Shown: one piece after another, positions 18,621-33,039 of the stretch
How the letters are laid out: the number at the start of each line of letters is the position of its first letter
Position numbering within the stretch: position 1 is the first letter of the stretch
Sequence record: MK568540.2
Reading direction: 5' to 3' (one strand)
Length of the DNA stretch: 64,000 nucleotides
Notes under the pieces: generated by a model
What the model saw: the letters and a program-made list of their open reading frames with translations, nothing else
What the model was told of the DNA's origin: nothing
Database searches by the model: none
Program-made: the position numbers and the translations under genes

Positions 18621-19075
18621 TGAAACTATCTAAGTTCCTTGAAAGTCAGGGAACTTACGTTGGTATCAGATTAGACGAGGCGAGTAAGCAAGAGTTAGTT
18701 CGATTGCAGAAAACGCTTCGTCTAAAAAATCCGTTAGAACCAGATAAATTTCACGTGACTGTGCTTTATAGTCGTAAGCAAATTGATGTACCTGTTGTCG
18801 ATACCACTTTCGTTGCTACTGTTGAACATATCGACTGTTGGAAAACGCAAGACGGCAAATATGCAGTTGTTGCTAAGATGGTATGTCCAGAACTTGTAGA
18901 ACGTCACGATGATCTTATCTCTATCGGTGGTACTCACGACTACCCTGACTATACCCCTCACGTTACGTTGTCTTATGACGACGCGATCACACCTATGCCC
19001 GTCAACGCTGAAGTTCGGCTTGTTGATGAATATCTTGAACCACTTGATTTAAATTGGGTTAATAGTAATGACTGA
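18620..19075 (+). CDS. 57B: gp57B / Acb1, 2H phosphodiesterase (anti-CBASS)
   Basis: Two HxT motifs (HVTV, HVTL); WKTQDG, THDYPDYTPH and EYLEPLDLNW are shared with T4 57B. Confidence 0.9.
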   Translation: MKLSKFLESQGTYVGIRLDEASKQELVRLQKTLRLKNPLEPDKFHVTVLYSRKQIDVPVVDTTFVATVEHIDCWKTQDGKYAVVAKMVCPELVERHDDLISIGGTHDYPDYTPHVTLSYDDAITPMPVNAEVRLVDEYLEPLDLNWVNSND

Positions 19076-19322
19076 TTTATCTACTGAAGCAGTATTAAAG
19101 AAGTACAATGAAGCTCCCGAAACTCTAACTACTGAAGAGAACGTTGTATTATTGACGTATATCATCGGTATGCAGACCGATCAGATTGCTTTACTTAAAG
19201 AGAACAACAAACTTTACGATAAAGCTATCACTGAGCTTCAGCAAGCTGTATCTCAGCTTCAAATCAAGCACGCTGCGCTTGAACGAGGTGAGACAGAAAG
19301 CGGTATCATTCTTTCAGTATAA
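19068..19322 (+). CDS. Hypothetical coiled-coil protein
   Basis: 84 aa ORF coupled to 57B. Confidence 0.7.
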   Translation: MTDLSTEAVLKKYNEAPETLTTEENVVLLTYIIGMQTDQIALLKENNKLYDKAITELQQAVSQLQIKHAALERGETESGIILSV

Positions 19323-19339
19323 AAACTTTCAAAAAGTTG

Positions 19340-19367
19340 TTGACTTATTCTGAAAAGCATGTAGAAT
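19340..19367 (+). promoter_or_regulatory. Early promoter
   Basis: AAAAAGTTG-TTGACT..TAGAAT. Confidence 0.7.
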
Positions 19368-19431
19368 GTATTTCATCGAGTCGAGAGACAGAACACAAAC
19401 TTTCAACTCGATGAAATATTTGAAAAAGTTG

Positions 19432-19459
19432 TTGACTTACACTGAAATGATGTTAAGAT
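19432..19459 (+). promoter_or_regulatory. Early promoter driving the RNA island
   Basis: AAAAAGTTG-TTGACT..TG-T-TAAGAT. Confidence 0.7.
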
Positions 19460-19467
19460 TAACACAG

Positions 19468-19576
19468 TTGATTAAGCGAGCTAAGTTCATCGTTCTCGCC
19501 TCTTATTGAAGATGAACAATATTGATTAAGCAGACTAAACTCATCGTTTCTGCCTCTTCTCTGAAGATGAGTAATA
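19468..19576 (+). repeat. Two tandem 54/55-nt repeats, each an H-type pseudoknot
   Basis: Copy 1: GCGAG/CTCGC plus GTTCATC/GATGAAC. Copy 2: GCAGA/TCTGC plus ACTCATC/GATGAGT. Both stems show compensatory changes. Confidence 0.85.
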
Positions 19577-19721
19577 TTTTAAATGTGCGTTAGCCGCAAT
19601 GAATACATGGAGCCAGTATACGTTCTGGCGTGCAGGGATACTCTTAGCGGACGAATTCTCAATCAAAAACTAGCTGAGTTAAAATTCGCTCAGTCGGCGT
19701 GCAAGTAGCGCACATTTAAAA
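19577..19721 (+). ncRNA. Orphan structured RNA
   Basis: 13-bp terminal stem TTTTAAATGTGCG/CGCACATTTAAAA with inner stems GCCG/CGGC and GCCAG/CTGGC. Confidence 0.55.
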
Positions 19722-19739
19722 TATCGAGAGTACATTGGT

Positions 19740-19862
19740 CGAGTGTTGGTGTAGTGGCAGCACACGTAGCATACTGTAATCAGACATGATTATATTCAGC
19801 AACCAATTTACGCATATCATAGGGAGATCGTGGGAACGGTTCGATTCCGTTACACTCGACCA
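19740..19862 (+). ncRNA. tRNA-like RNA E1 with CAGCAA module inserted in the anticodon stem (loop ATAGGGA)
   Basis: Acceptor CGAGTGT/ACACTCG, D-arm, T-arm AACGG-TTCGATT-CCGTT, ACCA end; 49-nt insert after position 28; 21-bp leader/trailer duplex 19726-19872. Confidence 0.8.
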
Positions 19863-20121
19863 ATGTACTCTCACTAACAAAGCGAGGTGGACAATTTGAT
19901 TGTATATCTTCTCGCACTAGTATTCATCGTCCTTTTTGCCTTGGACATTGAAGAAGAAAAGGTGCGCATTCATACTTTTGCGCTAATCACATGCGAACGG
20001 GTCATTCATCCCGTAATTAAAGCGCACGATTCCAGATTGTGTTTTGATTAGCTAAGGCAAATATAACTAGAGGATTTTTGGTGCTTGTGGTTAATCACAA
20101 GCACTCTCAAGAACATATTGA

Positions 20122-20243
20122 GCAGGGTTGGTGTAGTGGCTAGCACACGTAGCATAAACGCAAGCTGTTAAGTTTGTATTCTGCAATCAATTTAGCATAT
20201 CATTTCCAAGATCGTGACGCAGGTTCGAATCCTGCACCCTGCT
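20122..20243 (+). ncRNA. tRNA-like RNA E2 with CTGCAA module (loop ATTTCCAA)
   Basis: Cloverleaf with insert after position 28; 17-bp extended acceptor duplex 20112-20252; no encoded CCA. Confidence 0.8.
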
Positions 20244-20260
20244 CAATATGTTTTTACATT

Positions 20261-20373
20261 GGTGAAGTTAGTTCAGTAGGTTAGAACGCCGGCCAAAAAA
20301 CGAAGTCTGATAAGATTTCATTCTGCATTCACATGCACGCCGGAGGTCGCAGGTTCGAGTCCTGCACTTCACC
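20261..20373 (+). ncRNA. tRNA-like RNA E3 with CTGCAT module in the anticodon loop
   Basis: GGTGAAGT/ACTTCACC acceptor, CCGGC/GCCGG anticodon stem, canonical T-arm. Confidence 0.8.
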
Positions 20374-20383
20374 TTCAAATTCT

Positions 20384-20508
20384 GGAGAGTTAGCTCAGTC
20401 TGGTAGAGCAAAAGAATGTTAAAGAATACTGACAAGCATTCATGCTGCAAACCTTAATAACTAGGTAAATCTTTTTGTCACGTGGTTCAAATCCCGTACT
20501 CTCCACCA
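20384..20508 (+). ncRNA. tRNA-like RNA E4 with CTGCAA module in the anticodon loop
   Basis: GGAGAGT/ACTCTCC-A-CCA, GCTC/GAGC D-stem, AAAGA/TCTTT anticodon stem. Confidence 0.8.
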
Positions 20509-20522
20509 ATTTTCGAGGGTTT

Positions 20523-20891
20523 ATGAATAAGTTTAATGACATAAATGACGAACTTGATTGTATATTGCATCGTTGTGAGATTGTAAAGCGCAATCTTCGA
20601 AAATATTGTACATTTGCTGTTGAAATGCAGTATAGACTTATGATAAACTTCATTGGCATGGGTTGCTATCAACAAGTTCTGCCGATATTAGACAATCTAA
20701 ATTATCACCCTGATACAAGTCAGTTTGATAATATTGAGATTATGCAAACTATAAAAGAATTGATGAAATGTGCAGATAAGCTCGATTTGCTGCATCAACA
20801 AGACGCATTTCATCAAATTAAATCGACTGCTCGTATTACAGAAGAAGCAAACATCTTCGCTGCGAAAGTTGGTCGATTTCTAGAGAAATGA
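20523..20891 (+). CDS. Hypothetical protein
   Basis: ATG 20523 after SD GAGG (the track's GTG start overlaps E4). Confidence 0.65.
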   Translation: MNKFNDINDELDCILHRCEIVKRNLRKYCTFAVEMQYRLMINFIGMGCYQQVLPILDNLNYHPDTSQFDNIEIMQTIKELMKCADKLDLLHQQDAFHQIKSTARITEEANIFAAKVGRFLEK

Positions 20892-20892
20892 T

Positions 20893-20970
20893 GGCCCTAT
20901 AGCTCAACACGGTTAGAGCAACCGACTCATAATCGGTAGGTTACAGGTTCGAGTCCTGTTGGGGTCACCA
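20893..20970 (+). tRNA. tRNA-Ile2/Met (CAT)
   Basis: Canonical cloverleaf, loop CTCATAA, CCA; GGCCC start like ileX. Confidence 0.92.
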
Positions 20971-20990
20971 AAATAAATTGAAAAAAGTTG

Positions 20991-21019
20991 TTGACAGACG
21001 TTTCATCAACGTGTAGTAT
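20991..21019 (+). promoter_or_regulatory. Early promoter
   Basis: AAAAAAGTTG-TTGACA-N17-TAGTAT. Confidence 0.8.
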
Positions 21020-21049
21020 ACACATTATCAACTACACGAGGAAAACATT

Positions 21050-21280
21050 ATGTCACATAAATTGCTAGTTATCACATCAATGCACGGTTGCTACGTCGAT
21101 TACGATTTCAGAACTGAAATGTTTGACAGATACATGTGTGATGTTGTGATTCCGAACGACTCTGTTGTTTTGTACTCGGGTACAGTTTCAATAGATGAAA
21201 TTCGAGCAGTTGCGAACGAATGTTACGCTGACATCAAGATTGAAGAAGTCAGTGATGATGTTTTTGACAGCTATCTTTAA
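21050..21280 (+). CDS. Hypothetical protein
   Basis: SD GAGGA; 76 aa. Confidence 0.7.
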   Translation: MSHKLLVITSMHGCYVDYDFRTEMFDRYMCDVVIPNDSVVLYSGTVSIDEIRAVANECYADIKIEEVSDDVFDSYL

Positions 21281-21284
21281 AAAT

Positions 21285-21524
21285 GCCGCTAACTGGCGTA
21301 CAATACACAGTGTATTCCCAACATTAGTGCAGACGTAGGCTCGCAACCTACGTTGGTACCGAATCACTGGGACCGAGTAGAAAGTGCATGTGAGATGTCG
21401 AAGTCTTGTATGTAGAAATAACGCTCGGCTGCTCTGAAATGCTGATTAGCTCTTACTTCGAAACTCTAATTGGGTGGAAGAGGTGTTGTGTTTGACGTGT
21501 GTTCGATTCACACGAGCGGCGCCA
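21285..21524 (+). ncRNA. tmRNA-shaped RNA (tRNA-like ends, ~190-nt internal domain)
   Basis: GCCGCT/AGCGGC-G-CCA acceptor; T-arm CGTGTG-TTCGATT-CACACG; long H2-like helix (ACAATAC/GTGTTGT, TTCC/GGAA, ATTAG/CTAAT). Confidence 0.65.
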
Positions 21525-21537
21525 AGAGGAAATTATA

Positions 21538-22059
21538 ATGAAACCATTGAAGTTCGTTGAGGCGTTCTCTAAAGAAGAACGTGCTGCTATGACGATTGAA
21601 GAACGTAGCAGACTTCGTAAAATATATAACGAACGCTATCAAGAGTATGTTGATAAGTACATCAATGTATTCACTCGAAAAGACTTTCGAAGAGAGCGTT
21701 GCTGGGTTATTCTTGCACGATGTAAAAAGACTGGTGAAATCATCGGTCGAATTGAAAATAGTTTTAGTATGGGATGGTCTAAAGAGCGTGTTCGTGTTAT
21801 TCGACCGTATCTAAACGGTAATTTCACGGGCGATGACCGCTTCTCTAAAGCTGAGTACAACAAAGCGTGTGCTGAGTACATAACTCATCATGAGAAACAA
21901 GTAAAGTCTCTCAGAGAAGCTTACAAAGACACTCACGACGTTTTCTTATCTCGTGTGGGTAGTAAGAACTGTCCTGTTTCTATTGATTGGGATACGTATT
22001 ACAGTAAAAAAGACAAACGAAACTTTGAATATCGAAATTTGAAATTCAAAGTTAAATAA
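21538..22059 (+). CDS. Hypothetical basic protein
   Basis: ATG 21538 after SD GAGGA. Confidence 0.7.
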   Translation: MKPLKFVEAFSKEERAAMTIEERSRLRKIYNERYQEYVDKYINVFTRKDFRRERCWVILARCKKTGEIIGRIENSFSMGWSKERVRVIRPYLNGNFTGDDRFSKAEYNKACAEYITHHEKQVKSLREAYKDTHDVFLSRVGSKNCPVSIDWDTYYSKKDKRNFEYRNLKFKVK

Positions 22060-22064
22060 TTCAT

Positions 22065-22180
22065 AGTCGGGTAGCTCAGTGGTAGAGCACGAAGAATGAT
22101 ACTGACAAGTATCGCTCCAGCACTCCTTCAATTGCCTGTTAAGCACGTGGTCGCTGGTTCGAATCCAGCCCCGACTACCA
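22065..22180 (+). ncRNA. tRNA-Asn(GTT)-like RNA E5 with a 41-nt CAGCAC module inserted between positions 28 and 29
   Basis: Removing the insert restores CGTGC-CTGTTAA-GCACG; acceptor AGTCGGG/CCCGACT-A-CCA. Confidence 0.85.
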
Positions 22181-22206
22181 TTTTTGATAAACTAGTGAGG
22201 TATAAC

Positions 22207-22443
22207 ATGAGCGGAACATTTAATATCAACAAAACGTTACTGACTCCGAAACAATTGCGCAATCTAACAGATGAGCGTCTGAATGAATATCGCAAGTCGT
22301 TTCGTAAGCCTCTTGGGTTTTTGAAGCATCTGAACGATACAAACGAATTGACTTCAGATCAGCACAAGAAATTCGTTGAGCTTAATAAGCACTACAACGA
22401 CGAAATTCTTGCTGAAATGAACAAGCGAAAACACTTAGGTTAA
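22207..22443 (+). CDS. Hypothetical protein
   Basis: ATG 22207 after SD GAGG; reads on the plus strand. Confidence 0.6.
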   Translation: MSGTFNINKTLLTPKQLRNLTDERLNEYRKSFRKPLGFLKHLNDTNELTSDQHKKFVELNKHYNDEILAEMNKRKHLG

Positions 22444-22556
22444 TAAAATCGCAGAAAATTGATAATTTTTTTCAATTTTCTGCGAAAATACCGCAAATCG
22501 TCAGATTTAGTGTTATAAGTACTATAAAGAAACAAAACAAATTTTAATTTTTATTT

Positions 22557-22681
22557 CAAGAGAGCATTCAATGACGCATTCGTTTACACATTCATCTGAG
22601 ACATTACGCAGCGATTTTCTGCGCTCAGAATTCGTGTATCTAGCGAATCCGATTGCGAACCAGAAGTGGGATACCCTCTTG
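22557..22681 (+). ncRNA. Orphan structured RNA
   Basis: Nested stems CAAGAG/CTCTTG, TACAC/GTGTA, CTGAG/CTCAG, CGCAG/CTGCG; followed by a terminator. Confidence 0.5.
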
Positions 22682-22713
22682 TAGTCCGATAGTATAACAT
22701 AGAAGTATACTTG

Positions 22714-22738
22714 AGGACGCAAATAGCGTCCTTTTTTT
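22714..22738 (+). terminator. Rho-independent terminator
   Basis: AGGACGC-AAATA-GCGTCCT followed by a T-run. Confidence 0.85.
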
Positions 22739-22815
22739 ATGGGCGTAAGAAAGTTAAGAAATTTTGTTTAACGTACTTTGATTACAGAGTATGATAAACA
22801 AAGTTAAAGAACAAA

Positions 22816-22889
22816 CGGGACGTGGCGTAAAGGTAGCGTTCATGCTTTGGGAGCATGTGGTAAGAGTTCGAGTCTCTTCGTCCCGACCA
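22816..22889 (+). tRNA. tRNA-Pro (TGG)
   Basis: Cloverleaf, loop TTTGGGA, CCA. Confidence 0.92.
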
Positions 22890-22898
22890 ATTTAAAAT

Positions 22899-22975
22899 CC
22901 GTGACTAGCTCAATCTGGTAGAGTACTCCGTTTGGGGCGGAGAAGTTAAGCGTTCGAATCGCTTGTCACGGACCA
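22899..22975 (+). tRNA. tRNA-Pro (TGG)
   Basis: Cloverleaf, loop TTTGGGG, CCA. Confidence 0.9.
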
Positions 22976-22982
22976 GTTTAAT

Positions 22983-23058
22983 GCCCGATTAGCTCAATTG
23001 GAAGAGCAGCGCCCTACGAAGGCGAAGGTTACAAGTTCGAATCTTGTATTGGGTGCCA
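22983..23058 (+). tRNA. tRNA-Arg (ACG)
   Basis: Cloverleaf, loop CTACGAA, CCA. Confidence 0.92.
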
Positions 23059-23261
23059 GTTAGTGTTGTTTGATTGAAGCTCGCTTTCGCACATTCCCGA
23101 AACTGCTTCTACGAATTGATACGCTTAGGACCGTATCTCGTTAAGTACTGTCGAGATGATAGAATTTAACGAACTTTTCATAAATTAGTGTTTATGATGT
23201 CTTGAGCGAGTGTTAATATTAACACATAGAAAATGAAAACGTTAAGTTCTTCAAAATAAAT

Positions 23262-23392
23262 TCAAAAAGATGTTTACAACGATATAAACATCGTGTACAA
23301 TGAAGAAAAGCGAAACATCATTCAAAATCGAATGAAAAGTTTTTCAAAAAAGATGTTTACAACGATAAAAACATCATGTACAATGAAGAAAA
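23262..23392 (+). promoter_or_regulatory. Duplicated strong early promoters
   Basis: Two near-identical ~48-bp copies: AAAAAGATG-TTTACA-N17-TACAAT-GAAGAAAAG (-35 boxes at 23273 and 23356). Confidence 0.85.
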
Positions 23393-23411
23393 GAAGTTTA
23401 CAAAATTTAAT

Positions 23412-23488
23412 GCGCAAGTAGCCCAATTGGCAGAGGCACTGGTCTTAGAAACCAGAAGTTAAGAGTTCGAATCTCTTCTTGCGTACCA
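23412..23488 (+). tRNA. tRNA-Leu (TAG), short variable loop
   Basis: Loop CTTAGAA; 5-nt variable region. Confidence 0.9.
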
Positions 23489-23489
23489 A

Positions 23490-23564
23490 GCACCCTTAGC
23501 TTATCAGGAAAAGCGGCGGATTGAAGTCCCGCAGTGCTCGGTTCGATTCCGAGGGGGTGCACCA
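23490..23564 (+). tRNA. tRNA-Phe (GAA)
   Basis: Loop TTGAAGT with an A31-C39 mismatch. Confidence 0.85.
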
Positions 23565-23653
23565 TATTATAGCTTGTTTGTAAGAGTTAAATCAAGCAAG
23601 GGGTTTTAGTTTTGGGTTATTTAGCAAACGCTCTTAACGTGAAAATCAAATCT

Positions 23654-23728
23654 GGGTCGTTCGTATAACGGTAGTACATCTGGCTTTTAACCAGACCGGT
23701 GAGAGTTCGAATCTCTTGCGACCCACCA
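23654..23728 (+). tRNA. tRNA-Lys (TTT)
   Basis: Loop CTTTTAA, CCA. Confidence 0.92.
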
Positions 23729-23739
23729 TATTTTATAAT

Positions 23740-23816
23740 GCGTCGGTAGCTCATCATGGAAGAGCAGGGAGCTTTTAACTCTCAGGTGTCTGGTTCGAGT
23801 CCAGGGCGGCGTACCA
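23740..23816 (+). tRNA. tRNA-Lys (TTT)
   Basis: Loop CTTTTAA, CCA. Confidence 0.9.
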
Positions 23817-23879
23817 AATTAGATACATTGTGTATCGCTTTGCAAGTTAGATAGCTTGCAAAGCAATATACAATTTAAT

Positions 23880-23954
23880 TCTCCCGTGGACTAACGGTAG
23901 GTCATCACCCTTTCAAGGTGAAGTGCGCGAGTTCGAATCTCGTCGGGAGAACCA
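23880..23954 (+). tRNA. tRNA-Glu (TTC)
   Basis: Loop CTTTCAA, CCA. Confidence 0.9.
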
Positions 23955-23960
23955 AATTAC

Positions 23961-24046
23961 GGAGCGTACGTCTCAAGGTGAGACAGGGGACTGTAAATCC
24001 CTGACCCTTAACGGGTAGAGAGGTTCGATTCCTCTACGCTCCACCA
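23961..24046 (+). tRNA. tRNA-Tyr (GTA)
   Basis: Loop CTGTAAA, long variable arm, CCA. Confidence 0.92.
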
Positions 24047-24051
24047 GTTTT

Positions 24052-24139
24052 AGCTTGCATACTGCAATTTAACTTAATCTATTGATCGCTCGGCGAACTC
24101 AGTTCAGACAGCGATAAACAGACCAAAGAACGCAAGCTG
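24052..24139 (+). ncRNA. Free-standing CTGCAA-motif RNA
   Basis: GCTTGC-ATA-CTGCAA ... GCAAGC-TG with inner ATCGCT/AGCGAT stem. Confidence 0.75.
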
Positions 24140-24148
24140 TTGAATAAT

Positions 24149-24225
24149 TGCGGGGTAGAGAAGTGGTCATCTCGTCGGTCTCATAAGCCGGAGAACGCTG
24201 GTTCGAATCCAGCCCCACGCAACCA
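24149..24225 (+). tRNA. tRNA-fMet-like (CAT)
   Basis: GCGGGG..TCGGT-CTCATAA; extra A in the acceptor 3' strand. Confidence 0.85.
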
Positions 24226-24271
24226 AATTTATTTCGACTAAATATTGTTTTACGCAATAAGGAAAATTACA

Positions 24272-24514
24272 ATGAAAACATTTGATGAATTCATTACCGA
24301 GTCGAAAGATGTTACTTTCGGAGTTTCTGGCTCACTTTTTAGTGGTGCAATGGATAGAGAGAGACATCGAAACATGATGCAAAAACTTGGCGCTGTTAGA
24401 GACACCAAATCAAAATCACAAGATAATGTTTGGGTTGTCAGTCAAGCGAATGCTGATGCAGTTGAAGAATATCTTAGTCAGTTTGATAAGCTGATGTGGG
24501 GTAGACACAAATAA
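24272..24514 (+). CDS. Putative internal head protein with capsid-targeting sequence
   Basis: Starts MKTFDEFITE (T4 CTS MKTYQEFIAE); CTAAATA late-like promoter at ~24238. Confidence 0.7.
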   Translation: MKTFDEFITESKDVTFGVSGSLFSGAMDRERHRNMMQKLGAVRDTKSKSQDNVWVVSQANADAVEEYLSQFDKLMWGRHK

Positions 24515-24520
24515 TTAATT

Positions 24521-24619
24521 GGAAGGCTTAGCCGAGAGATTCTGGGTAGCGGCAACGGTCTTGAAAACCGTCGGTCACCGGGAGGTGATGTTAGGGTTCG
24601 AATCCCTAGTCTTCCGCCA
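24521..24619 (+). tRNA. tRNA-Ser (TGA)
   Basis: Loop CTTGAAA, long variable arm, large D-loop, G73-CCA. Confidence 0.9.
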
Positions 24620-24683
24620 ATTAGTTAACCGGGAAGTTTAGTCACTTAACCGATTAACACGAGCACTGAAATGTGCTCACTTT

Positions 24684-24757
24684 AGTCCCTTAGCTCAACG
24701 GTAGAGCGTGCGACCGATAATCGCTTGGTAAGAGTTCGATTCTCTTAGGGACTACCA
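24684..24757 (+). tRNA. tRNA-Ile (GAT), C33
   Basis: Loop CCGATAA, CCA. Confidence 0.88.
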
Positions 24758-24763
24758 GATTTT

Positions 24764-24837
24764 AGGGGCATGATGTAAAGGCAGCATGACGGATTCCAAA
24801 CCCGTTCGTTAGAGTTCGAATCTCTATGCCCCTGCCA
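24764..24837 (+). tRNA. tRNA-Trp (CCA)
   Basis: Loop TTCCAAA, G73-CCA. Confidence 0.88.
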
Positions 24838-24842
24838 GTTTA

Positions 24843-24901
24843 AGTAATCTTACAGCAAACAATACAAAACTTTTATTTGGAAAAAGCAAAAAGGATTACT
24901 G
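24843..24901 (+). ncRNA. Minimal CAGCAA-motif RNA carrying an anticodon-like stem-loop
   Basis: GTAATC-TTA-CAGCAA ... CTTTT-ATTTGGA-AAAAG ... GATTAC-TG. Confidence 0.8.
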
Positions 24902-24912
24902 TTTAAATTCAA

Positions 24913-24987
24913 GGGTGTGTAACTCAGAGGCAGAGTAGTCGGCTGTTAACCGACAAGTCGAGATTTCGAAATTCTCCACGCCCGCCA
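24913..24987 (+). tRNA. tRNA-Asn (GTT)
   Basis: Loop CTGTTAA, CCA. Confidence 0.88.
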
Positions 24988-24988
24988 T

Positions 24989-25064
24989 GCTTCATTAACT
25001 CAGTTGGTAGAGTGTCTGACTGTTAATCAGAGAGTCGTTGGTTCGAGTCCAACATGAAGCGCCA
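24989..25064 (+). tRNA. tRNA-Asn (GTT)
   Basis: Loop CTGTTAA, CCA. Confidence 0.92.
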
Positions 25065-25132
25065 AATTCGGAGAGTCACTACCGTTAAGTGTGAACTTGA
25101 AAAACAAAGCAACTACTTTAAGTTGTCTTTGG

Positions 25133-25208
25133 GGAGCCGAGGTGTAAGTGGTTGCATGTCTCCCTGTCACGGAGAAGGTAGCGGGTTCGAAACCCGTCGG
25201 TTCCGCCA
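25133..25208 (+). tRNA. tRNA-Asp (GTC)
   Basis: Loop CTGTCAC, CCA. Confidence 0.92.
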
Positions 25209-25227
25209 AAGATAATTTAAGAACAAT

Positions 25228-25301
25228 TGGGGATTGGTGTAAAGGCAGCATAACGTACTTTGAATGCGTTGGTATCAGTTCGAATCTGTTATCCCCAGCC
25301 A
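25228..25301 (+). tRNA. tRNA-Gln (TTG)
   Basis: TGGGGAT start, loop CTTTGAA, CCA. Confidence 0.9.
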
Positions 25302-25310
25302 AATACCGAA

Positions 25311-25424
25311 GAGTGTTTTCAGCAAACAATTTACTAATATTCTTATCGGAAAGAAATGTTTAGGGTTCGATTCCCTTTCAGTGTTGGTATCACTGGTCTG
25401 GACGACGCTAGTAATAACACTCAG
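25311..25424 (+). ncRNA. Circularly permuted tRNA-like RNA closed by the CAGCAA motif (YrlA-like topology)
   Basis: Order: GAGTGT-TTT-CAGCAA, anticodon-like hairpin, T-arm AGGG-TTCGATT-CCCT, closed acceptor CAGTG/CACTG, D-like hairpin, ACACTC-AG. Confidence 0.8.
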
Positions 25425-25428
25425 TAAC

Positions 25429-25504
25429 GCCCTGATAGCACAACTGGCAGTGCAGCTCACTTGTAATGAGCAGGTTCGCGGTTCGAATCCGTGTCAGGGC
25501 ACCA
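25429..25504 (+). tRNA. tRNA-Thr (TGT)
   Basis: Loop CTTGTAA, CCA. Confidence 0.92.
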
Positions 25505-25528
25505 TTTTCAAACAACTGCGAGAATAAC

Positions 25529-25738
25529 ATGAACTATATTTCTGTATGGTGTGAATATGACATTGGTGGGGATTTCGGTGGCAACAATAACGAAGATGTT
25601 TTTTCCGTTAGTGAAGAATTATCTAATGAAGAAGTTGAAGCAAAAGTTGCTGAATATATTTCTGACATTGTTAGTGAGCCGATTGAAGAACTTGAAGGTT
25701 TATACGGTTGGGAATATATTTCAATCACACAGTTGTAA
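25529..25738 (+). CDS. Hypothetical acidic protein
   Basis: ATG 25529, MNYISVWCEY. Confidence 0.6.
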   Translation: MNYISVWCEYDIGGDFGGNNNEDVFSVSEELSNEEVEAKVAEYISDIVSEPIEELEGLYGWEYISITQL

Positions 25739-25745
25739 AAAATAT

Positions 25746-25820
25746 GGGCCGTTAGCTTAATTGGGAAAGCGCCTCACTTGCAATGAGGAAGATAGGGTTC
25801 GACTCCCTGCGTGTCCACCA
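25746..25820 (+). tRNA. tRNA-Ala (TGC)
   Basis: Loop CTTGCAA; irregular acceptor/T stems; CCA. Confidence 0.8.
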
Positions 25821-25894
25821 AATTTCGAACACATGAGCGTAGACTCTCTTTACTACCATCGTCTACACTAGTTCATGGTTCGAATCTTTTCAAT

Positions 25895-25970
25895 GCGCTG
25901 TTAGCTCAATTGGAAGAGCACGTCCCTTCTAAGGATGGGGTTATGAGTTCGAATCTCATACGGCGTGCCA
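25895..25970 (+). tRNA. tRNA-Arg (TCT)
   Basis: Loop CTTCTAA, CCA. Confidence 0.92.
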
Positions 25971-26033
25971 TATTAAGCTCTTATCATGCGACGAATGATA
26001 CTTTGCTTCGGCATATCACGAGCATGGTGAGAG

Positions 26034-26262
26034 AGACAATATACAGCAAACAATTGAAATTACTTAAAAGAAGTGATGATCTTAACCTGGGCTGATTTTA
26101 ACCTGAGCTTGCTTAGGCGCAGCTTGAAAGGAAAGATTCTCTCTGTCTAGAAATAGTCAGATAGGCGCGTCGCTGAAACAGACGATATTTGCTTGTTGAG
26201 AATCAATAAGCTAGTCAACTCCGATTTATGCAAAAGACGAAAAAACACTTCGGTATTGTCTG
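26034..26262 (+). ncRNA. Large CAGCAA-motif RNA L1
   Basis: GACAAT-ATA-CAGCAA ... ATTGTC-TG; several hairpins; 3' block shared with L2. Confidence 0.8.
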
Positions 26263-26266
26263 TACT

Positions 26267-26485
26267 TAATTCGTCGGAAACGACACTGTAGCCGAAAGGC
26301 AAGATACGCTAACTTAGATGTTAGCAGCGATATAGGATGTATCGCGTGGCATTATTATGAACGTTTCTAGTCATCGTCATGTAAAACAATCAAAACTAAG
26401 CAGAGGTAACAGTACCCACTATGTGGTTCCTCACTCAGACCATGAATATATGGTGTCAGCCAGTGTGCGATTAAATGAGTTAATT
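26267..26485 (+). ncRNA. Orphan multi-hairpin RNA with GNRA loops
   Basis: GTCG-GAAA-CGAC, GCC-GAAA-GGC, GCTAAC/GTTAGC, GCGATA/TATCGC, ACCAT/ATGGT. Confidence 0.55.
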
Positions 26486-26494
26486 ACTGCAATT

Positions 26495-26570
26495 GGTGAT
26501 GTAGCTCAAGTGGCAGAGCAACGCTTTCATACGGCGTAAGATCCGATTTCGAGTATCGGTGTCACCTCCA
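26495..26570 (+). tRNA. tRNA-Met (CAT)
   Basis: Loop TTCATAC, T73-CCA. Confidence 0.85.
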
Positions 26571-26759
26571 AATTCAAAAACAAAGAGGTTACGAAGCATG
26601 ACTACTTTACACTAAGCAAGGGCAACATACGCGATAAAATTCGATATGTTGAAAAATGTCTCGCGAATGAGACCAACCCGTTCTTTATAAGAACACTTAC
26701 TGTAGAGCTTACGAATCTACGTGCAATACGTGATTTGTTTGACGCTTCAGATTAACAAT

Positions 26760-26833
26760 GCGGGTATGATGTAATGGTAGCATGACGTCCTTCCAAGTCG
26801 TTCGTCTCGGTTCGAGTCCGTGTACCCGCTCCA
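26760..26833 (+). tRNA. tRNA-Gly (TCC)
   Basis: GCGGGTA start, loop CTTCCAA, T73-CCA. Confidence 0.9.
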
Positions 26834-26839
26834 AATTTT

Positions 26840-26913
26840 GGTCCCTTAGTATAATGGCAGTACGTCTCTTTTACACAGAGAAAGAAGTGGCTCGATTCCA
26901 CTAGGGACTACCA
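26840..26913 (+). tRNA. tRNA-Val (TAC)
   Basis: Loop TTTACAC, CCA. Confidence 0.88.
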
Positions 26914-26936
26914 TTCTTTATTATGAGAAATAAATT

Positions 26937-27176
26937 ATGACTCCTGTATTACTTGAAACTCACGAATACGTAAACCCGAATCAAATTGAAAAGCTTCAAC
27001 GCATGGACAGACTTATGTTTGACTGTTGGCGCGCTGGGTTTAAGCGTAACAAGATTCTTGAGCGTGCTCTTGAAATTGAGTCTTCAACGACTGAAGCAGA
27101 TATCGAAATTTATTTCAAAAACATGTTTACAAGAGAACTATCGCCTGATAGAATCTACTTAAAGAAAACTGATTAA
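26937..27176 (+). CDS. Hypothetical protein
   Basis: 79 aa ORF with SD-like GAGA. Confidence 0.65.
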   Translation: MTPVLLETHEYVNPNQIEKLQRMDRLMFDCWRAGFKRNKILERALEIESSTTEADIEIYFKNMFTRELSPDRIYLKKTD

Positions 27177-27302
27177 TGCACAGGAAGCGCATTCGTTTGA
27201 TGTCGTAAACATCCCAAAGTATTGCAGGTAGCGACGGCGGTGTTGCTAGTAGATTTATCTATTTCTCCAAGACATAATGCAAACTTTTAAGTGTACTTTG
27301 GT

Positions 27303-27379
27303 GTGGCAGTGGGTGAAGTGGAAATACCCCCGGGTTGTGATTCCGGAAGATGCGGGTTCGATCCCCGTCTGTCACCCCA
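27303..27379 (+). tRNA. tRNA-His (GTG)
   Basis: Loop TTGTGAT, C73-CCA. Confidence 0.88.
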
Positions 27380-27391
27380 AAGTACATTTAT

Positions 27392-27465
27392 GCTCGAATC
27401 GTATAATGGAAGTATGACGGATTGCAAATCCGCAGGTCAGGGTTCGATTCCCTGTTCGAGCTCCA
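27392..27465 (+). tRNA. tRNA-Cys (GCA)
   Basis: Loop TTGCAAA, T73-CCA. Confidence 0.9.
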
Positions 27466-27467
27466 AT

Positions 27468-27544
27468 GCGCACGTGGTCCAATTGGCAGAGGCATGAGGC
27501 TTAAAATCTCAGGGATGGCGGTTCGAATCCGCCCGTGCGTACCA
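27468..27544 (+). tRNA. tRNA-Leu (TAA), short variable loop
   Basis: Loop CTTAAAA; 5-nt variable region. Confidence 0.9.
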
Positions 27545-27548
27545 AATT

Positions 27549-27649
27549 CTAGCATAAGCCGCGTTCTATACGAAGCTAGACTACCGCCGTTGAAAAACGG
27601 TCTCAGCCGAGCGAAAGCTGACAGGTGTTAGGGATTAAAGAGTCGCGGC
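27549..27649 (+). ncRNA. Pseudoknotted orphan RNA
   Basis: TCTAGC/GCTAGA crossed by GCCGCG/CGCGGC; inner GCCGTT-GAAA-AACGGT and TCAGC/GCTGA. Confidence 0.55.
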
Positions 27650-27660
27650 AGTTTATTCAA

Positions 27661-27737
27661 GCCCAACTAGTCCAATTGGCAGAGGCACTAGTTTCAAACA
27701 CTAGGAGTTCCGAGTTCGAATCTCGGGTTGGGCACCA
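27661..27737 (+). tRNA. tRNA-Leu (CAA), short variable loop
   Basis: Loop TTCAAAC; 5-nt variable region. Confidence 0.9.
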
Positions 27738-27743
27738 AATTCA

Positions 27744-27868
27744 CTTAGCAACGCGAATCGAAAGAGAGTGGATAGACCTGCTAAGAGTCCCGCTAGGTCT
27801 TTAAATTATCTAAAGTGGATCTGCGAAGCGCGTGGCACACGTCAGCAATAAGAGCAAATATGTGTCTG
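27744..27868 (+). ncRNA. Pseudoknot followed by a minimal CAGCAA-motif hairpin
   Basis: CTTAGC/GCTAAG crossed by AGACCT/AGGTCT; then GGCACA-CGT-CAGCAA...TGTGTC-TG (27834-27868). Confidence 0.65.
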
Positions 27869-27905
27869 AGCATGAGAGCAGCATGCCATTAATTGATGAG
27901 ACGTT

Positions 27906-27994
27906 GGAAGCATGGTCTAAAGGTATGACAGCACCCTGCTAAGGTGTCGGACGTTAATAGCGTTCTCTGGGTTCGATTCCCAGTGCTTCCGCCA
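27906..27994 (+). tRNA. tRNA-Ser (GCT)
   Basis: Loop CTGCTAA, long variable arm, G73-CCA. Confidence 0.92.
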
Positions 27995-27999
27995 AATTC

Positions 28000-28260
28000 G
28001 CAATAAGACATTGTACAGCAATCATTACAAAATCAAAGCAAACTTTAATAGTAATGAGGCGCACTAGCTGCTTTCTCAGTGATGACGTGAGCCTGTCGCA
28101 TTCTCATGGTAGGAAATGACCATTAAGACGGTGTTCGTACTGTCAAACGAAATAGGACTCATGCCGAATCATGAGTATTTTTCCGATGAGAAACATCGTT
28201 ATAGTCAATTGAGATTTAAGGAAAGACGATAAAACATTTCTCGAATGTCTGTGTATTGCA
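28000..28260 (+). ncRNA. Large CAGCAA-motif RNA L2
   Basis: GACATT-GTA-CAGCAA ... AATGTC-TG, outer GCAATA/TATTGC stem, many hairpins, 3' block shared with L1. Confidence 0.8.
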
Positions 28261-28266
28261 CATTAG

Positions 28267-28290: not shown

Positions 28291-28380
28291 GTTTATGGCG
28301 TTTGATAATTGATATAGTCTAAAGAAACAGTTAGATATGATTCTAAATACAGATGAACTCAAATCAATTGGAGAAATGTC

Positions 28381-30992: not shown

Positions 30993-31035
30993 GACATTTT
31001 ACAGCAATTAATTATGAGGAAATGAACAATGTCAG
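30993..31035 (+). promoter_or_regulatory. CAGCAA motif enclosing the SD and pairing with the start codon of the DUF2828 gene
   Basis: GACATT-TTA-CAGCAA-...GAGG...-AATGTC-AG; the ATG at 31029 lies in the 3' strand. Confidence 0.85.
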
Positions 31036-32465
31036 TATTTATGAACGCAATGCAAACAAACGATTCACGCACAGCAAACGGTGCAGTTACTCACAGCACT
31101 TCAGGTAACGAGTGTCTAAACTTGTTCTTCGGTATTGCTGCTATGCGTGGCAACGATCAGTCTAAAACACTGTTCGGTCGTGCGTTTGCAGAAAACCCAG
31201 AACTAGCGACTCGCATTCTTTTGTGGTCTCGTGATGTTCGAGGTGGTGCGGGTGAACGTGGTACTTTCCGTACTCTATTCACTAAACTTTGTAATGAACA
31301 GCCTGACGTAGCTCGTGCTGTAATGTCGAAAATTCCAGAACTAGGTCGTTACGATGACTTGATTTCTGCTTTCGGTACACGTCTTGAAAAAGATGCGATT
31401 ACAATGTGGTCGAACGCAATTGTCAATGACAAGAATGGTCTTGCTGCGAAGTGGTTCCCACGTGAAAACAGCAAAAACGGTCATGTGTTCAAGCGCACAA
31501 TCAAGTCTCTTGGCGTAACTGCGAAGCAGTGGCGTAAGATTCTGTCGCTTCTGTCTGACACTGTTGAGCAGAAGATGTGTGCGCAAAAATGGGATGCAAT
31601 CGACTTCGGTAAGTTGCCTTCTGTAGCGTCTGCTCGTTATCAACAAGCATTCGGTCGTAACGCTTCAACACGTTACACAAACTACATCGAGTCACTTCAA
31701 AAAGGTGAAGCGAAGATCAACGCTGGCGCATTGTTCCCATACGATGTCGTTAAGAGCGTTAGTCACGGTAATGCGTCTGTAGCGAACGAGCAATGGAAAG
31801 CTCTGCCAAACTACATGGAAGGTTCTGATGAACGCATCATCCCTGTTGTTGACGTGTCTGGCTCTATGAGCACGCCAATTAACGCAGGTACAGACCGTTC
31901 AGGTGTGACTTGTAAGCAAGTTGCAATGTCTCTTGGGATTTATGTTGCTGAACGCAATGAAGGCATCTTCAAAGATCAGTTCATTTCGTTCTCAAGCGAC
32001 CCGCACTTCCACCAGTTGCGCGGCTCTTCATTGAAAGAGCGTCTTGATAACATGAATCGTTCAGGCGAAGACATGAGTACGAACATCGGTAAGTGCTTTG
32101 ATGTTCTGCTAGAGCGTGCGAAGCGTGCAAATCTTTCACAAGAAGATATGCCAACCAAGTTGCTTATCATGAGTGACATGGAATTCGATCAAGCAAACAC
32201 TGGTGGTGGTTGGTACGGTCGCGGTGAACCTGCGAACTTCGATGCAATCAAAGCCAAGTACGCACGTGCTGGTTATGAAATGCCACAACTGGTCTTCTGG
32301 AACATTCGTGGTCGTCTTGGCAACGTTCCGGTTAAAGCTGGTGAAGCGGGTACTGCACTGGTATCTGGTTGTAGCCCATCTATCTTGACTTCACTGTTGG
32401 GTGGTGAGCTTGAGCCAATCAAGATCATGATGAAAACTGTAGGCGTCGAACGCTACAGCTTTTAA
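31029..32465 (+). CDS. DUF2828-type TROVE/Ro60-like protein with C-terminal vWA domain
   Basis: T.NGA..HSTSG..CL.LF, RDVRGGAGER, IPELGRYDDL, AKWFPR; vWA MIDAS DVSGSM, ST, LIMSDMEFD, VFWN. Confidence 0.8.
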   Translation: MSVFMNAMQTNDSRTANGAVTHSTSGNECLNLFFGIAAMRGNDQSKTLFGRAFAENPELATRILLWSRDVRGGAGERGTFRTLFTKLCNEQPDVARAVMSKIPELGRYDDLISAFGTRLEKDAITMWSNAIVNDKNGLAAKWFPRENSKNGHVFKRTIKSLGVTAKQWRKILSLLSDTVEQKMCAQKWDAIDFGKLPSVASARYQQAFGRNASTRYTNYIESLQKGEAKINAGALFPYDVVKSVSHGNASVANEQWKALPNYMEGSDERIIPVVDVSGSMSTPINAGTDRSGVTCKQVAMSLGIYVAERNEGIFKDQFISFSSDPHFHQLRGSSLKERLDNMNRSGEDMSTNIGKCFDVLLERAKRANLSQEDMPTKLLIMSDMEFDQANTGGGWYGRGEPANFDAIKAKYARAGYEMPQLVFWNIRGRLGNVPVKAGEAGTALVSGCSPSILTSLLGGELEPIKIMMKTVGVERYSF

Positions 32466-32514: not shown

Positions 32515-33039
32515 ATGTTCGATTGGGAAGCGATAGAAACAGCTATCAATAACAGTCATCCAAATAGCACAATATACGTTGGGTGTGATAGTAAGCGTAA
32601 AAGTGACATGATTAGTTACGCGACTGTGATCATAATTCATCTTGAAGGTAGTAAAGGTGCTCAAGTGTTTAAAGCAGTTGAGACTGAACCTGCATACTTA
32701 TCATGTAAAGATGGTATCAGAAGTCGATTGATGAATGAAGTATACAAAGCGGGTGAAACTGCACTAATGGTTAAGCCAATGTGCGGTACTAGAGGCTTTG
32801 AAGTTCACGTTGACATCAACCCTGACCCCACACACAAATCTCACGTTGCTTATAACGAAGCTAAAGGCACGATCTTGGGATATGTTGGTCAAGAGCCCGT
32901 GTTCAAACCTGATGCGTTTGCTGCGTCTTGTGCTGCTGATTATGACGCAGTTCGAAGAGCAGATAAAATCGCTAAACGAAAAGAACTTAGACGGGCTAAA
33001 CGAAAAGCAAAGAAACAAAAAACAAAAGGGCGCAAATAG
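32515..33039 (+). CDS. RNase H-like YkuK (DUF458)-family protein
   Basis: IYVGCDS, RLMNEV, EVHVDINPD..HKS, KPDAFAAS.AAD. Confidence 0.8.
   Translation: MFDWEAIETAINNSHPNSTIYVGCDSKRKSDMISYATVIIIHLEGSKGAQVFKAVETEPAYLSCKDGIRSRLMNEVYKAGETALMVKPMCGTRGFEVHVDINPDPTHKSHVAYNEAKGTILGYVGQEPVFKPDAFAASCAADYDAVRRADKIAKRKELRRAKRKAKKQKTKGRK

What the first reader, a model, noticed from the sequence alone, without database searches (positions are those of the whole stretch)
22065..22180. E5: a tRNA-Asn(GTT) with a clean 41-nt module insertion at positions 28/29
Seen: deleting 22091-22131 restores a normal tRNA-Asn (CGTGC-CTGTTAA-GCACG), with CCA. The insert carries TGATAC-TGACAA-GTATCG-CTC-CAGCAC. Two ordinary Asn(GTT) tRNAs exist at 24913 and 24989, so this copy is not needed for decoding. 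This is the clearest case of module insertion. It does not look like a group I intron (too short) or an archaeal bulge-helix-bulge intron. Inference: a tagged tRNA recruited to the RNP, or a new protein-dependent tRNA intron.
Basis: partly seen in the sequence, partly recalled or inferred. Interest (0 to 1): 0.8.

Follow-up and report, generated by a model that had tools for sequence, protein, structure and literature searches.

The report
tRNA-shaped RNA for phage Ro protein
A phage gene that looks like an asparagine tRNA carrying a 41-base extra arm is real and strongly conserved. It belongs to a seemingly undescribed family of tRNA-shaped RNAs encoded next to a Ro60-like RNA-binding protein in many phages and prophages, so it is probably the RNA half of an RNA-care particle, not a broken or spliced tRNA.

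Summary
Window 22065-22180 (+) is a complete tRNA body with a 41-nt insert between positions 28 and 29. Removing it restores an Asn(GTT) anticodon arm.

The window is Vibrio phage Va3, a KVP40-like phage. KVP40 annotates the orthologue as tRNA-Pseudo-3. It is not decaying: it is 97.5-100% identical across phages whose flanks are about 85% identical.

E5 is one of five insert-bearing tRNA-like genes in the window. All share a module: a 6-8 bp hairpin, then 2-3 nt, then C-N-G-C-A-A/C.

The same architecture, with the same insertion site, occurs in human-gut phages, digester phages and Clostridia prophages. There, 1-4 such RNAs lie 83-1645 nt upstream of a DUF2828/DUF7788 gene. Across 740 kb searched around those genes, 36 of 37 elements lie in that upstream position.

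The DUF2828 protein folds like Ro60, and the window encodes one 8.9 kb downstream of E5.

The best reading is a Y-RNA-like partner of a Ro60-like protein in an RNA-repair setting. Splicing is not excluded but is disfavoured. Rfam 15 has no family for it and I found no paper describing it.

The parts
22065..22180 (+). E5: tRNA-like gene with an Asn(GTT)-type anticodon stem-loop and a 41-nt extra arm; encoded ACCA 3' end
   Evidence: Rfam tRNA 49.8 bits; ARAGORN with introns; orthologue of KVP40 tRNA-Pseudo-3; covariation in acceptor and T stems
22092..22132 (+). The 41-nt insert between tRNA positions 28 and 29
   Evidence: Direct reading. Inserts of 38-52 nt sit at the same site in 16 E5-type relatives
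22097..22114 (+). Module hairpin: 7 bp (TGATACT/AGTATCG) with loop GACA
   Evidence: There are 54 different stem sequences among 75 family members, all pairing. The shuffle control gives a mean of 3.8%
22118..22123 (+). Conserved single-stranded motif C-N-G-C-A-A/C (here CAGCAC), 3 nt after the hairpin
   Evidence: CAGCAA in 43 of 75 distinct elements; the gap is 2-3 nt in 56 of 75
22133..22147 (+). Retained anticodon stem-loop: TGC, CTGTTAA, GCA, closed by C27-G43 and G28-C42
   Evidence: All three inner pairs covary across relatives (UA/GC; GC/CG/AU; CG/UA/AU/GC)
19740..19862 (+). Z: sister module-tRNA, insert at the same 28/29 site, hairpin followed by CAGCAA
20122..20246 (+). A: sister module-tRNA, insert at 28/29, hairpin followed by CTGCAA
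20261..20374 (+). B: sister module-tRNA (KVP40 tRNA-Pseudo-5); the module sits inside the loop closed by a 5-bp anticodon stem
   Evidence: Rfam tRNA 56.3 bits; fold z-score -3.2
20384..20508 (+). C: sister module-tRNA (KVP40 tRNA-Pseudo-4); insert after an ATGTTAA loop
   Evidence: Rfam tRNA 50.1 bits
29594..29941 (+). cREC (cyclic-phosphate-processing receiver) domain protein
   Evidence: PF20274, E 7.5e-15
31029..32465 (+). Ro60-like protein (DUF2828 + DUF7788/vWA), the proposed protein partner
   Evidence: Pfam. The AF2 model (pLDDT 81) has Ro60/TROVE as its top 8 PDB matches, E 1.5e-9 to 5.6e-6. The MIDAS residues D275, S277, S279, T351 and D383 are invariant
32515..33039 (+). YkuK-like RNase H-fold protein
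   Evidence: PF04308, E 4.1e-17; the same family is found near an E5-type RNA in locus L118
24913..25064 (+). Two ordinary tRNA-Asn(GTT) genes, both with discriminator G73 (context, not part of the element)

Best explanation
E5 is a stable non-coding RNA, not a decoder and not a pseudogene. It keeps a complete tRNA body: acceptor stem with ACCA, D arm, T arm and an Asn-type anticodon stem-loop. Between base pairs 28-42 and 29-41 it carries an extra arm. That arm is an A-rich linker, a 7-bp hairpin and a single-stranded C-N-G-C-A-A/C motif with a U-rich tail.

The extra arm is a shared tag found on five tRNA-shaped RNAs of this phage. I infer that the tag is the binding site for the phage's Ro60-like protein (DUF2828/DUF7788, window 31029-32465). 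The RNAs would then play the part that Y RNAs play for Ro60: they bind the ring protein and use their tRNA-shaped end to bring it together with tRNA-handling or RNA-repair enzymes (RNA ligases, cREC phosphoesterase, YkuK nuclease) or with damaged tRNAs during infection.

Shown: the anatomy, the conservation, the structural covariation, the Ro60 fold of the protein, and the genomic linkage between the RNA family and the protein family.

Inferred: physical binding, that the insert stays in the mature RNA, and the repair or quality-control role.
For: (1) Purifying selection acts on the whole element including the insert. It is 99.2-100% identical in 24 records and 97.5-98.3% in the nt-1/VS1 group. 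The surrounding 1.5 kb is about 85% identical.

(2) The tRNA fold is kept by compensatory changes: acceptor 7/7 pairs, T stem 3/5, inner anticodon stem 3/3.

(3) The module recurs on five genes in the window. It also recurs in at least three other phage lineages at the identical 28/29 site. There are 54 different hairpin stems that always pair.

(4) Linkage was found starting from the RNA. Gut-phage contigs found by an RNA pattern alone carry a DUF2828 gene (36% identical) 300-500 nt downstream on the same strand.

(5) Linkage was found starting from the protein. Of 64 DUF2828 loci in bacterial genomes and MAGs, 20 have module-tRNAs within 2 kb upstream on the same strand. That is 36 elements, against 1 element anywhere else in 740 kb on both strands.

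(6) The DUF2828 protein has the Ro60 fold and a conserved MIDAS motif. PHROG 850 calls it an RNA-binding protein.

(7) RNA-repair genes recur nearby. In the window: cREC and YkuK. In L112/L118: Rnl1-type and Rnl2-type ligases plus YkuK. In L138: an AAA_33 kinase.

(8) From established knowledge, bacterial and phage Ro60 proteins bind tRNA-like Y RNAs encoded beside them (PMC4201824, PMC12135203).

(9) No uninterrupted copy of this anticodon arm exists in 2.9 million viral contigs, so the insert is an integral part of the gene.
Against: No transcript, binding or processing data exist.

In the window E5 is 8.9 kb from the DUF2828 gene, with the tRNA array in between.

44 of the 64 genomic DUF2828 loci, and most marine viral DUF2828 loci (L009-L086), showed no module-tRNA within the DNA fetched. 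My detector is strict, and the KVP40 layout would fall outside a 10-kb flank.

One E5-type lineage (L104/L112/L118) shows RNA ligases but no DUF2828 in the 9.5 kb available.

The very strong conservation of a perfect anticodon stem-loop, restorable by a clean deletion, is what an intron model predicts. My model does not explain it specifically.

The topology differs from known Y RNAs.
Confidence: 0.55

Rival explanations
1. The insert is a new protein-dependent tRNA intron. The hairpin/CNGCA module would be the handle by which phage proteins (for example the YkuK nuclease and the Ro60-like chaperone) cut on both sides. cREC and an RNA ligase would then heal and seal the ends, giving a working tRNA-Asn.
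For: A clean 41-nt deletion restores a canonical Asn(GTT) arm. The anticodon stem-loop is maintained by covariation. RNA ligases, a cyclic-phosphate enzyme and an RNase H-fold nuclease are linked to the family. In the fetched part of the L104/L112 tRNA array no other tRNA-Asn was seen.
Against: Sister RNAs with the same module (B, X1, X3) cannot yield a 7-nt loop with U33 by any deletion. Orthologues of A and Z change their loop sequence and length.

The insertion point relative to the module differs between E5 (28/29) and C (after 38).

The discriminator varies (A/G/U) among GUU-bearing members. Both ordinary Asn tRNAs have G73, which is an AsnRS identity element in E. coli by established knowledge.

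The anticodon varies among E5-type members: GUU, GAU, GGU, UUU.

I found no bulge-helix-bulge and no conserved junction structure. The phage already has two Asn tRNAs.
Confidence: 0.15
2. E5 is a decoy or bait. It would display an Asn-type (ANN-reading, U36-A37-A38) anticodon loop to soak up or sense a host anticodon nuclease or another tRNA-targeting defence. The extra arm would keep it off the ribosome. The Ro60-like protein would be incidental or would only stabilise it.
For: The anticodon loop pattern C-U-G-N-U-A-A is the most conserved part of E5-type RNAs. The phage duplicates several isoacceptors with different stems, as phages facing anticodon nucleases do. The setting is RNA repair.
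Against: It does not explain the sister RNAs that have no normal anticodon loop yet carry the same module. It does not explain the tight linkage to DUF2828. No nuclease target is known. It overlaps with the main explanation rather than excluding it.
Confidence: 0.15
3. E5 is a decaying tRNA pseudogene, disrupted by a chance insertion. This matches the current GenBank label for KVP40.
For: It is annotated tRNA-Pseudo-3 in KVP40. Default tRNA finders reject it.
Against: It is near-identical across phages whose flanks have diverged 15%. It shows compensatory changes in three helices. The same build is kept in unrelated phage lineages.
Confidence: 0.02
4. E5 decodes Asn codons as it is, with the extra arm tolerated on the ribosome.
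For: It has an intact anticodon loop, T and D arms and a CCA end.
Against: From established knowledge, the P-site contacts of 16S rRNA G1338/A1339 with anticodon-stem pairs 29-41 and 30-40 leave no room for a branch at 28/29. The discriminator is not G73. The anticodon is not conserved across the family.
Confidence: 0.03

Closest known systems
Bacterial and phage Y RNAs of the YrlA type with Ro60/Rsr (Rfam RF02553; PMC4201824; Thermus phage phiLo Yrl1/Yrl2, PMC12135203)
   Same: These are small RNAs encoded beside a ring-shaped Ro60-fold protein gene, often several per locus. They contain a tRNA-like domain with T and D arms. They are found in RNA-repair neighbourhoods and also in phages.
   Different: The topology is the reverse. 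In YrlA the 5' and 3' ends form the Ro-binding stem and the 'acceptor' is a closed loop. Here the ends form a true acceptor stem (ACCA in the window) and the added module sits in the anticodon arm.

The protein is from a different family (DUF2828/DUF7788, not Pfam TROVE; 10-17% identity to solved Ro60 structures).

The YrlA model does not match E5. The only YrlA hits, 32 and 20 bits against a threshold of 69, span the T arm of one neighbouring gene and the D arm of the next.
KVP40 'tRNA-Pseudo-3, -4, -5' (GenBank AY283928)
   Same: These are the same genes. E5 is the orthologue of tRNA-Pseudo-3 (99.2% identical).
   Different: The label implies a non-functional remnant. The conservation, covariation and linkage data argue for a functional RNA. 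Z and A have no feature at all in KVP40.
Phage T4 stable RNAs rnaC and rnaD (species 1 and 2), function unknown
   Same: They are 119-139-nt stable RNAs encoded in the syntenic tRNA cluster, downstream of genes 3, 1 and 57B. rnaC has a canonical T arm. rnaD contains a short hairpin followed by A-CAGCAG.
   Different: No alignment or model-based homology was established. T4 has no DUF2828 gene in the region read. The resemblance is a lead only.
tRNA introns (bacterial group I; archaeal/eukaryal bulge-helix-bulge)
   Same: An insertion in the anticodon arm whose removal restores a canonical tRNA.
   Different: At 41 nt it is far too short for a group I ribozyme, and there was no Rfam intron hit. 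It sits at 28/29, inside the stem. I saw no bulge-helix-bulge. Sister copies are not restorable.

Membership tests
tRNA (Rfam RF00005) | Score at or above the gathering threshold (29 bits) with acceptor, D and T arms | tested here: met
   49.8 bits, E 3.7e-9, model positions 1-71
tRNA (Rfam RF00005) | Continuous 5-bp anticodon stem with a 7-nt loop | tested here: not met
   A 41-nt branch lies between pairs 28-42 and 29-41. Default ARAGORN rejects the gene
tRNA-Asn | GUU anticodon plus discriminator G73 (E. coli AsnRS identity set, from established knowledge) | tested here: not met
   GUU is present but the discriminator is A in the window and A/G/U in relatives. Both ordinary phage Asn tRNAs have G73
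YrlA-type Y RNA (RF02553) | Match to the YrlA covariance model (69 bits) | tested here: not met
   No hit at E5. The 32- and 20-bit hits elsewhere span two adjacent genes
YrlA-type Y RNA (RF02553) | 5' and 3' ends pair to form the Ro-binding stem; the tRNA-like domain is internal | tested here: not met
   The ends form a 7-bp acceptor stem with ACCA
Y RNA in the broad sense (RNA partner of a Ro60-fold protein) | Encoded next to a Ro60-fold protein gene | tested here: met
   36 of 37 elements lie within 2 kb upstream of DUF2828 on the same strand. Adjacency also holds in gut phages. In the window the distance is 8.9 kb. The Ro60 fold is shown
Y RNA in the broad sense (RNA partner of a Ro60-fold protein) | Physically bound by the Ro60-fold protein | not testable with these tools
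   Needs RIP, EMSA or cryo-EM
Group I intron in tRNA | Ribozyme core P1-P9, more than about 200 nt, usually in the anticodon loop | tested here: not met
   41 nt, no Rfam intron match
Bulge-helix-bulge tRNA intron | Two 3-nt bulges separated by a 4-bp helix at the splice sites | tested here: not met
   I inspected the junctions and the folds of 16 inserts. The flanks are predicted single-stranded and no conserved junction helix appears. This was inspection, not a dedicated search tool
Ro60/TROVE protein family (for the partner protein) | HEAT-repeat ring plus a vWA domain with a MIDAS motif | tested here: met
   Full-length Foldseek matches to 9kop, 9l5y, 1yvr and 2i91 (TM 0.49-0.59, E 1.5e-9 to 1.5e-7). 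D-x-S-x-S, T and D are invariant. The Pfam TROVE model itself does not hit

The most novel reading that the evidence does not exclude
The insert is excised. In that case phages of bacteria would have their own protein-only tRNA splicing pathway. The hairpin/CNGCA module would mark the intron, a Ro60-like ring would hold the pre-tRNA, a YkuK-type nuclease would cut it, and cREC plus an RNA ligase would heal and seal it. Release of a working tRNA would then be controlled during infection.
Probability: 0.12. Interest if true: 0.9.

Novelty: new variant of a known kind. Interest (0 to 1): 0.7.

Why it matters
Ro60 and its Y RNAs are conserved from bacteria to humans, yet their bacterial and viral roles are poorly understood. 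This finding points to a second, widespread Ro60-like protein family (DUF2828/DUF7788, currently of unknown function). It also points to a matching RNA family built the opposite way round from known tRNA-like Y RNAs.

It turns 'pseudo-tRNAs', annotated in a model vibriophage in 2003, into testable functional RNAs. It supplies a defined candidate protein-binding tag.

It links phage tRNA arrays to RNA-repair genes, which bears on how phages resist tRNA-cleaving host defences. There is also a practical point: genome annotation pipelines currently call these genes pseudo-tRNAs, mis-assign them (Val, Ile, SeC) or skip them.

Tried and rejected
1. Known RNA families. Rfam 15 in E-value mode over window 19000-29000 and over a prophage cluster returned only tRNA, plus chance hits. 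There was no ribozyme, intron or dedicated family.

2. Whole-element folding. The minimum-free-energy fold is not distinctive (z -1.8) and disrupts the D arm. Only the module hairpin and the acceptor and T arms are stable in the centroid.

3. A closing helix (P1) between the two flanks of the insert. Each lineage offers a possible 4-7 bp pairing, but in no consistent register, and RNAfold leaves the flanks single-stranded. I do not claim it.

4. Pairing of CAGCAA with the RNA's own D loop, T loop or T stem. It works in some copies only, so I rejected it.

5. The strict module pattern in DUF2828 loci from IMG/VR matched only KVP40 relatives. My tRNA-shape scan found few long elements within 10 kb in marine viral loci.

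6. The gapped pattern scan gave two chance matches, L099 and L100.

7. T4 rnaC/rnaD were read. Homology could not be shown.

8. The KVP40 genome paper (PMC180978) is not held. Searches for DUF2828, DUF7788, Ro60-like, cREC and YkuK found no description of these RNAs.

9. Neighbouring small ORFs (173 aa upstream, 78 aa downstream) have no Pfam or PHROG function.

10. I did not build a covariance model. MAFFT does not place the hairpins of different lineages in register. I used per-sequence hairpin detection with shuffles instead.

Full report
WHAT IS THERE

The window is Vibrio phage Va3 (MK568540.2, 124001-188000), a KVP40-like T4 relative of genus Schizotequatrovirus.

At 22065-22180 (+) the sequence reads as a complete tRNA body:
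- 7-bp acceptor stem, 22065-22071 with 22170-22176
- D arm with G18-G19
- canonical T arm
- 5-nt variable loop
- discriminator A and an encoded CCA

After C27-G28 (22090-22091) come 41 extra bases, 22092-22132. They are followed by TGC, CTGTTAA, GCA and CG. Removing 22092-22132 gives a perfect Asn(GTT) anticodon arm.

Rfam's tRNA model scores 49.8 bits (E 3.7e-9) with a local insertion in the anticodon arm. Default ARAGORN misses the gene. ARAGORN with introns allowed finds it. The two ordinary tRNA-Asn genes at 24913 and 24989 are confirmed.

IT IS NOT A DEAD GENE

KVP40 annotates the orthologue as tRNA-Pseudo-3. Other records call it Val or Ile, or leave it out.

- The 126-nt element is 99.2-100% identical in 24 records and 97.5-98.3% in the nt-1/VS1 group.
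- The surrounding 1.5 kb is only about 85% identical between Va3 and KVP40.
- In the more distant 6E35.1a/D482 group the acceptor stem is entirely different yet fully paired, and the insert is retained.
- Across 12 sequences from five lineages, all seven acceptor pairs and three of five T-stem pairs show changes on both sides. 99.6% of cells are paired against 85% in shuffles and 31-50% when partners are slid.

E5 IS ONE OF FIVE

ARAGORN with introns, Rfam and direct reading give five insert-bearing tRNA-like genes in the window:
- Z, 19740-19862
- A, 20122-20246
- B, 20261-20374
- C, 20384-20508
- E5

All carry the same module: an A-rich linker, a 6-8 bp hairpin, 2-4 nt, then C-N-G-C-A-A/C and a U/A-rich tail. 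The hairpin stems differ completely between copies but always pair.

In Z, A and E5 the module sits at the same place, after C27-G28, and a 3-bp stem with a 7- or 8-nt loop follows. In B and C it lies within the loop closed by a 5-bp anticodon stem. Only E5 and C regain a GTT loop on deletion. B cannot give a loop with U33 by any deletion.

THE SAME BUILD OCCURS IN UNRELATED PHAGES

An 18-nt pattern from the E5 anticodon arm found further contigs in IMG/VR and in metagenomes:
- human-gut phage contigs (L088-L097, L101-L117)
- a digester lineage (L104/L111/L112)
- a 359-kb jumbo-phage contig (L087)

Each has a different acceptor stem, the same insertion site, and a 50-55-nt insert. In all but L087 that insert has a hairpin followed by CAGCAA. 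The gut and digester lineages each carry two or three further module-tRNAs beside it.

This search was biased towards the Asn arm. An unbiased set came later from the protein side.

THE PROTEIN PARTNER

The window encodes a cREC domain protein (29594-29941), a DUF2828+DUF7788 protein (31029-32465) and a YkuK-type RNase H-fold protein (32515-33039).

An AlphaFold model of the DUF2828 protein, built from 26 homologues, has pLDDT 81. Its top eight PDB matches are all Ro60/TROVE structures, aligned over the full length (E 1.5e-9 to 5.6e-6, TM 0.49-0.59). They include the Ro60 of Thermus phage phiLo. The vWA MIDAS residues are invariant.

Ro60 proteins of bacteria and phages bind tRNA-like Y RNAs encoded next to them (PMC4201824, PMC12135203). 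Jumbo-phage surveys have noted TROVE proteins 'with a tRNA-like partner' as an RNA-repair platform (PMC7824862).

LINKAGE, TESTED FROM BOTH SIDES

From the RNA side: the gut-phage contigs, found only by RNA pattern, have a DUF2828 gene (36% identical to the window's) 300-500 nt downstream of the RNA cluster on the same strand.

From the protein side: a scan of 185,579 species genomes with the DUF2828 alignment gave 80 loci. These are mostly Clostridia, Erysipelotrichaceae and Lachnospiraceae contigs and include the complete genome AP018533.1.
- I used a strict shape-based detector. It requires a 7/7 acceptor stem, a T arm, a D stem, length of at least 96 nt, and a hairpin of at least 5 bp next to CNGC.
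- It found module-tRNAs within 2 kb upstream on the same strand in 20 of the 64 loci that had enough upstream DNA.
- That is 36 elements, 83-1645 nt from the gene start, against one element anywhere else in 740 kb on both strands. Under a uniform spread about 3 would fall upstream.

Over all sources there are 75 distinct elements with 54 distinct hairpin stems. CAGCAA occurs in 43 of them. A hairpin as long as the one observed arises in 3.8% of shuffles on average.

The E5-type build recurs in this unbiased set. The inner anticodon stem covaries: GAG/CUC, GGU/ACC, UGC/GCA, GCU/AGC, GGA/UCC. The loops are CUGUUAA (most), CUGAUAA, CUGGUAA or AUUUUAA.

REPAIR CONTEXT

- In the digester lineage the E5-type RNA closes a 20-tRNA array. 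It is followed by an Rnl1-type ligase, an Rnl2-type ligase and a YkuK homologue.
- In a Clostridiaceae locus the cassette is followed by an AAA_33 kinase and a weak RNA-ligase-type OB-fold match.

INTERPRETATION

The best-supported reading is that E5 and its sisters are the RNA subunits of a Ro60-like ribonucleoprotein. On this reading the tRNA body is the working end and the hairpin/CNGCA arm is the tag that the DUF2828 protein recognises. The particle would act in tRNA or RNA quality control and repair during infection.

Binding, retention of the insert, and the repair role are all inferences.

The splicing reading is weaker, for five reasons:
- Several sisters are not restorable.
- The insertion point relative to the module differs between E5 and C.
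- The discriminator varies (A/G/U) among GUU-bearing members, while both ordinary Asn tRNAs have G73.
- The anticodon itself varies.
- No splice-site structure is conserved.

Splicing is not excluded. The clean restorability, the covarying anticodon stem and the linked ligases are what it predicts.

An uninterrupted copy of this anticodon arm does not exist in IMG/VR. So the insert is not a sporadic insertion.

NOVELTY

Rfam 15 has no family for these RNAs. Seven full-text searches found no paper describing them or the DUF2828 link. The KVP40 genome paper could not be read.

The kind of thing is known: a Ro60-fold protein with a tRNA-like RNA. The RNA architecture and the protein family are new variants.

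CAVEATS

- The association is not universal in the DNA I could fetch.
- In the window the RNAs and the protein gene are 9-11 kb apart.
- MAG contigs may be phage DNA binned with bacteria.
- My detector selects for pairing, so I rely on shuffles and positional enrichment rather than on pair counts for the hairpin.

Noticed in passing
window 25746-25817 (+): Rfam tRNA hit of 44.9 bits that ARAGORN does not call. By position in the array it appears to correspond to KVP40 tRNA-Pseudo-1 (L001 10327-10401). It is of normal length and has no module.
   Followed up: no
window 19333-19580 (+): Two near-identical promoter-like stretches (TTGACT-16-TAGAAT at 19340 and TTGACT-16-TAAGAT at 19432). They are followed by two tandem ~55-nt units (about 19468-19522 and 19523-19578), each able to form a TTCATC/GATGAA-type hairpin, just upstream of the first module-tRNA.
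   Followed up: no
window 22816-27994: The tRNA array carries duplicated isoacceptors with different stem sequences: Pro(TGG) x2, Lys(TTT) x2, Asn(GTT) x2 and Met(CAT) x3 in the window.
   Followed up: no
window 22097-22114, 20160-20177, 20302-20319: In the KVP40 group the module hairpins end in C-UG(A/U)(C/U)AA-G. This is the E5-type anticodon loop pattern C-U-G-N-U-A-A with one base fewer. D. radiodurans Yrn1 is also described as having a 6-nt 'anticodon loop' (PMC4201824).
   Followed up: partly
L087 (IMGVR_UViG_3300015606_001334, 359 kb), e.g. 9493-9620, 3334-3474, 946-1073, 766-945 (-): A jumbo-phage tRNA array with many tRNA-like genes carrying 40-80-nt inserts that lack CAGCAA. Its E5-type member (9676-9805) has a nested-helix insert with CGGCC directly after a hairpin.
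   Followed up: partly
L097, L105, L109, L116, L117 (gut-phage contigs): A variant of the E5-type RNA has CAACAA instead of CAGCAA, so the G of the motif is not invariant.
   Followed up: no
L098 (phage T4) 2909-3172 (-): T4 rnaD contains a 4-bp hairpin followed by A-CAGCAG, and rnaC has a canonical T arm. Both lie in the tRNA cluster syntenic with the window (genes 3, 1, 57B upstream).
   Followed up: partly
L138 7647-12851; L113 7147-8115: Prophage-type cassettes flank the RNA/DUF2828 unit with an SPFH/Band_7 protein upstream. In L138 a class-V aminotransferase (cysteine-desulfurase-like), an AAA_33/KTI12 kinase and a PAPS-reductase-fold protein lie downstream.
   Followed up: no
window 20345-20409 and 20215-20287: Weak Rfam YrlA hits (32 and 20 bits) arise because the T arm of one module-tRNA and the D arm of the next lie about 10-20 nt apart. 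That spacing mimics the permuted order of YrlA.
   Followed up: partly
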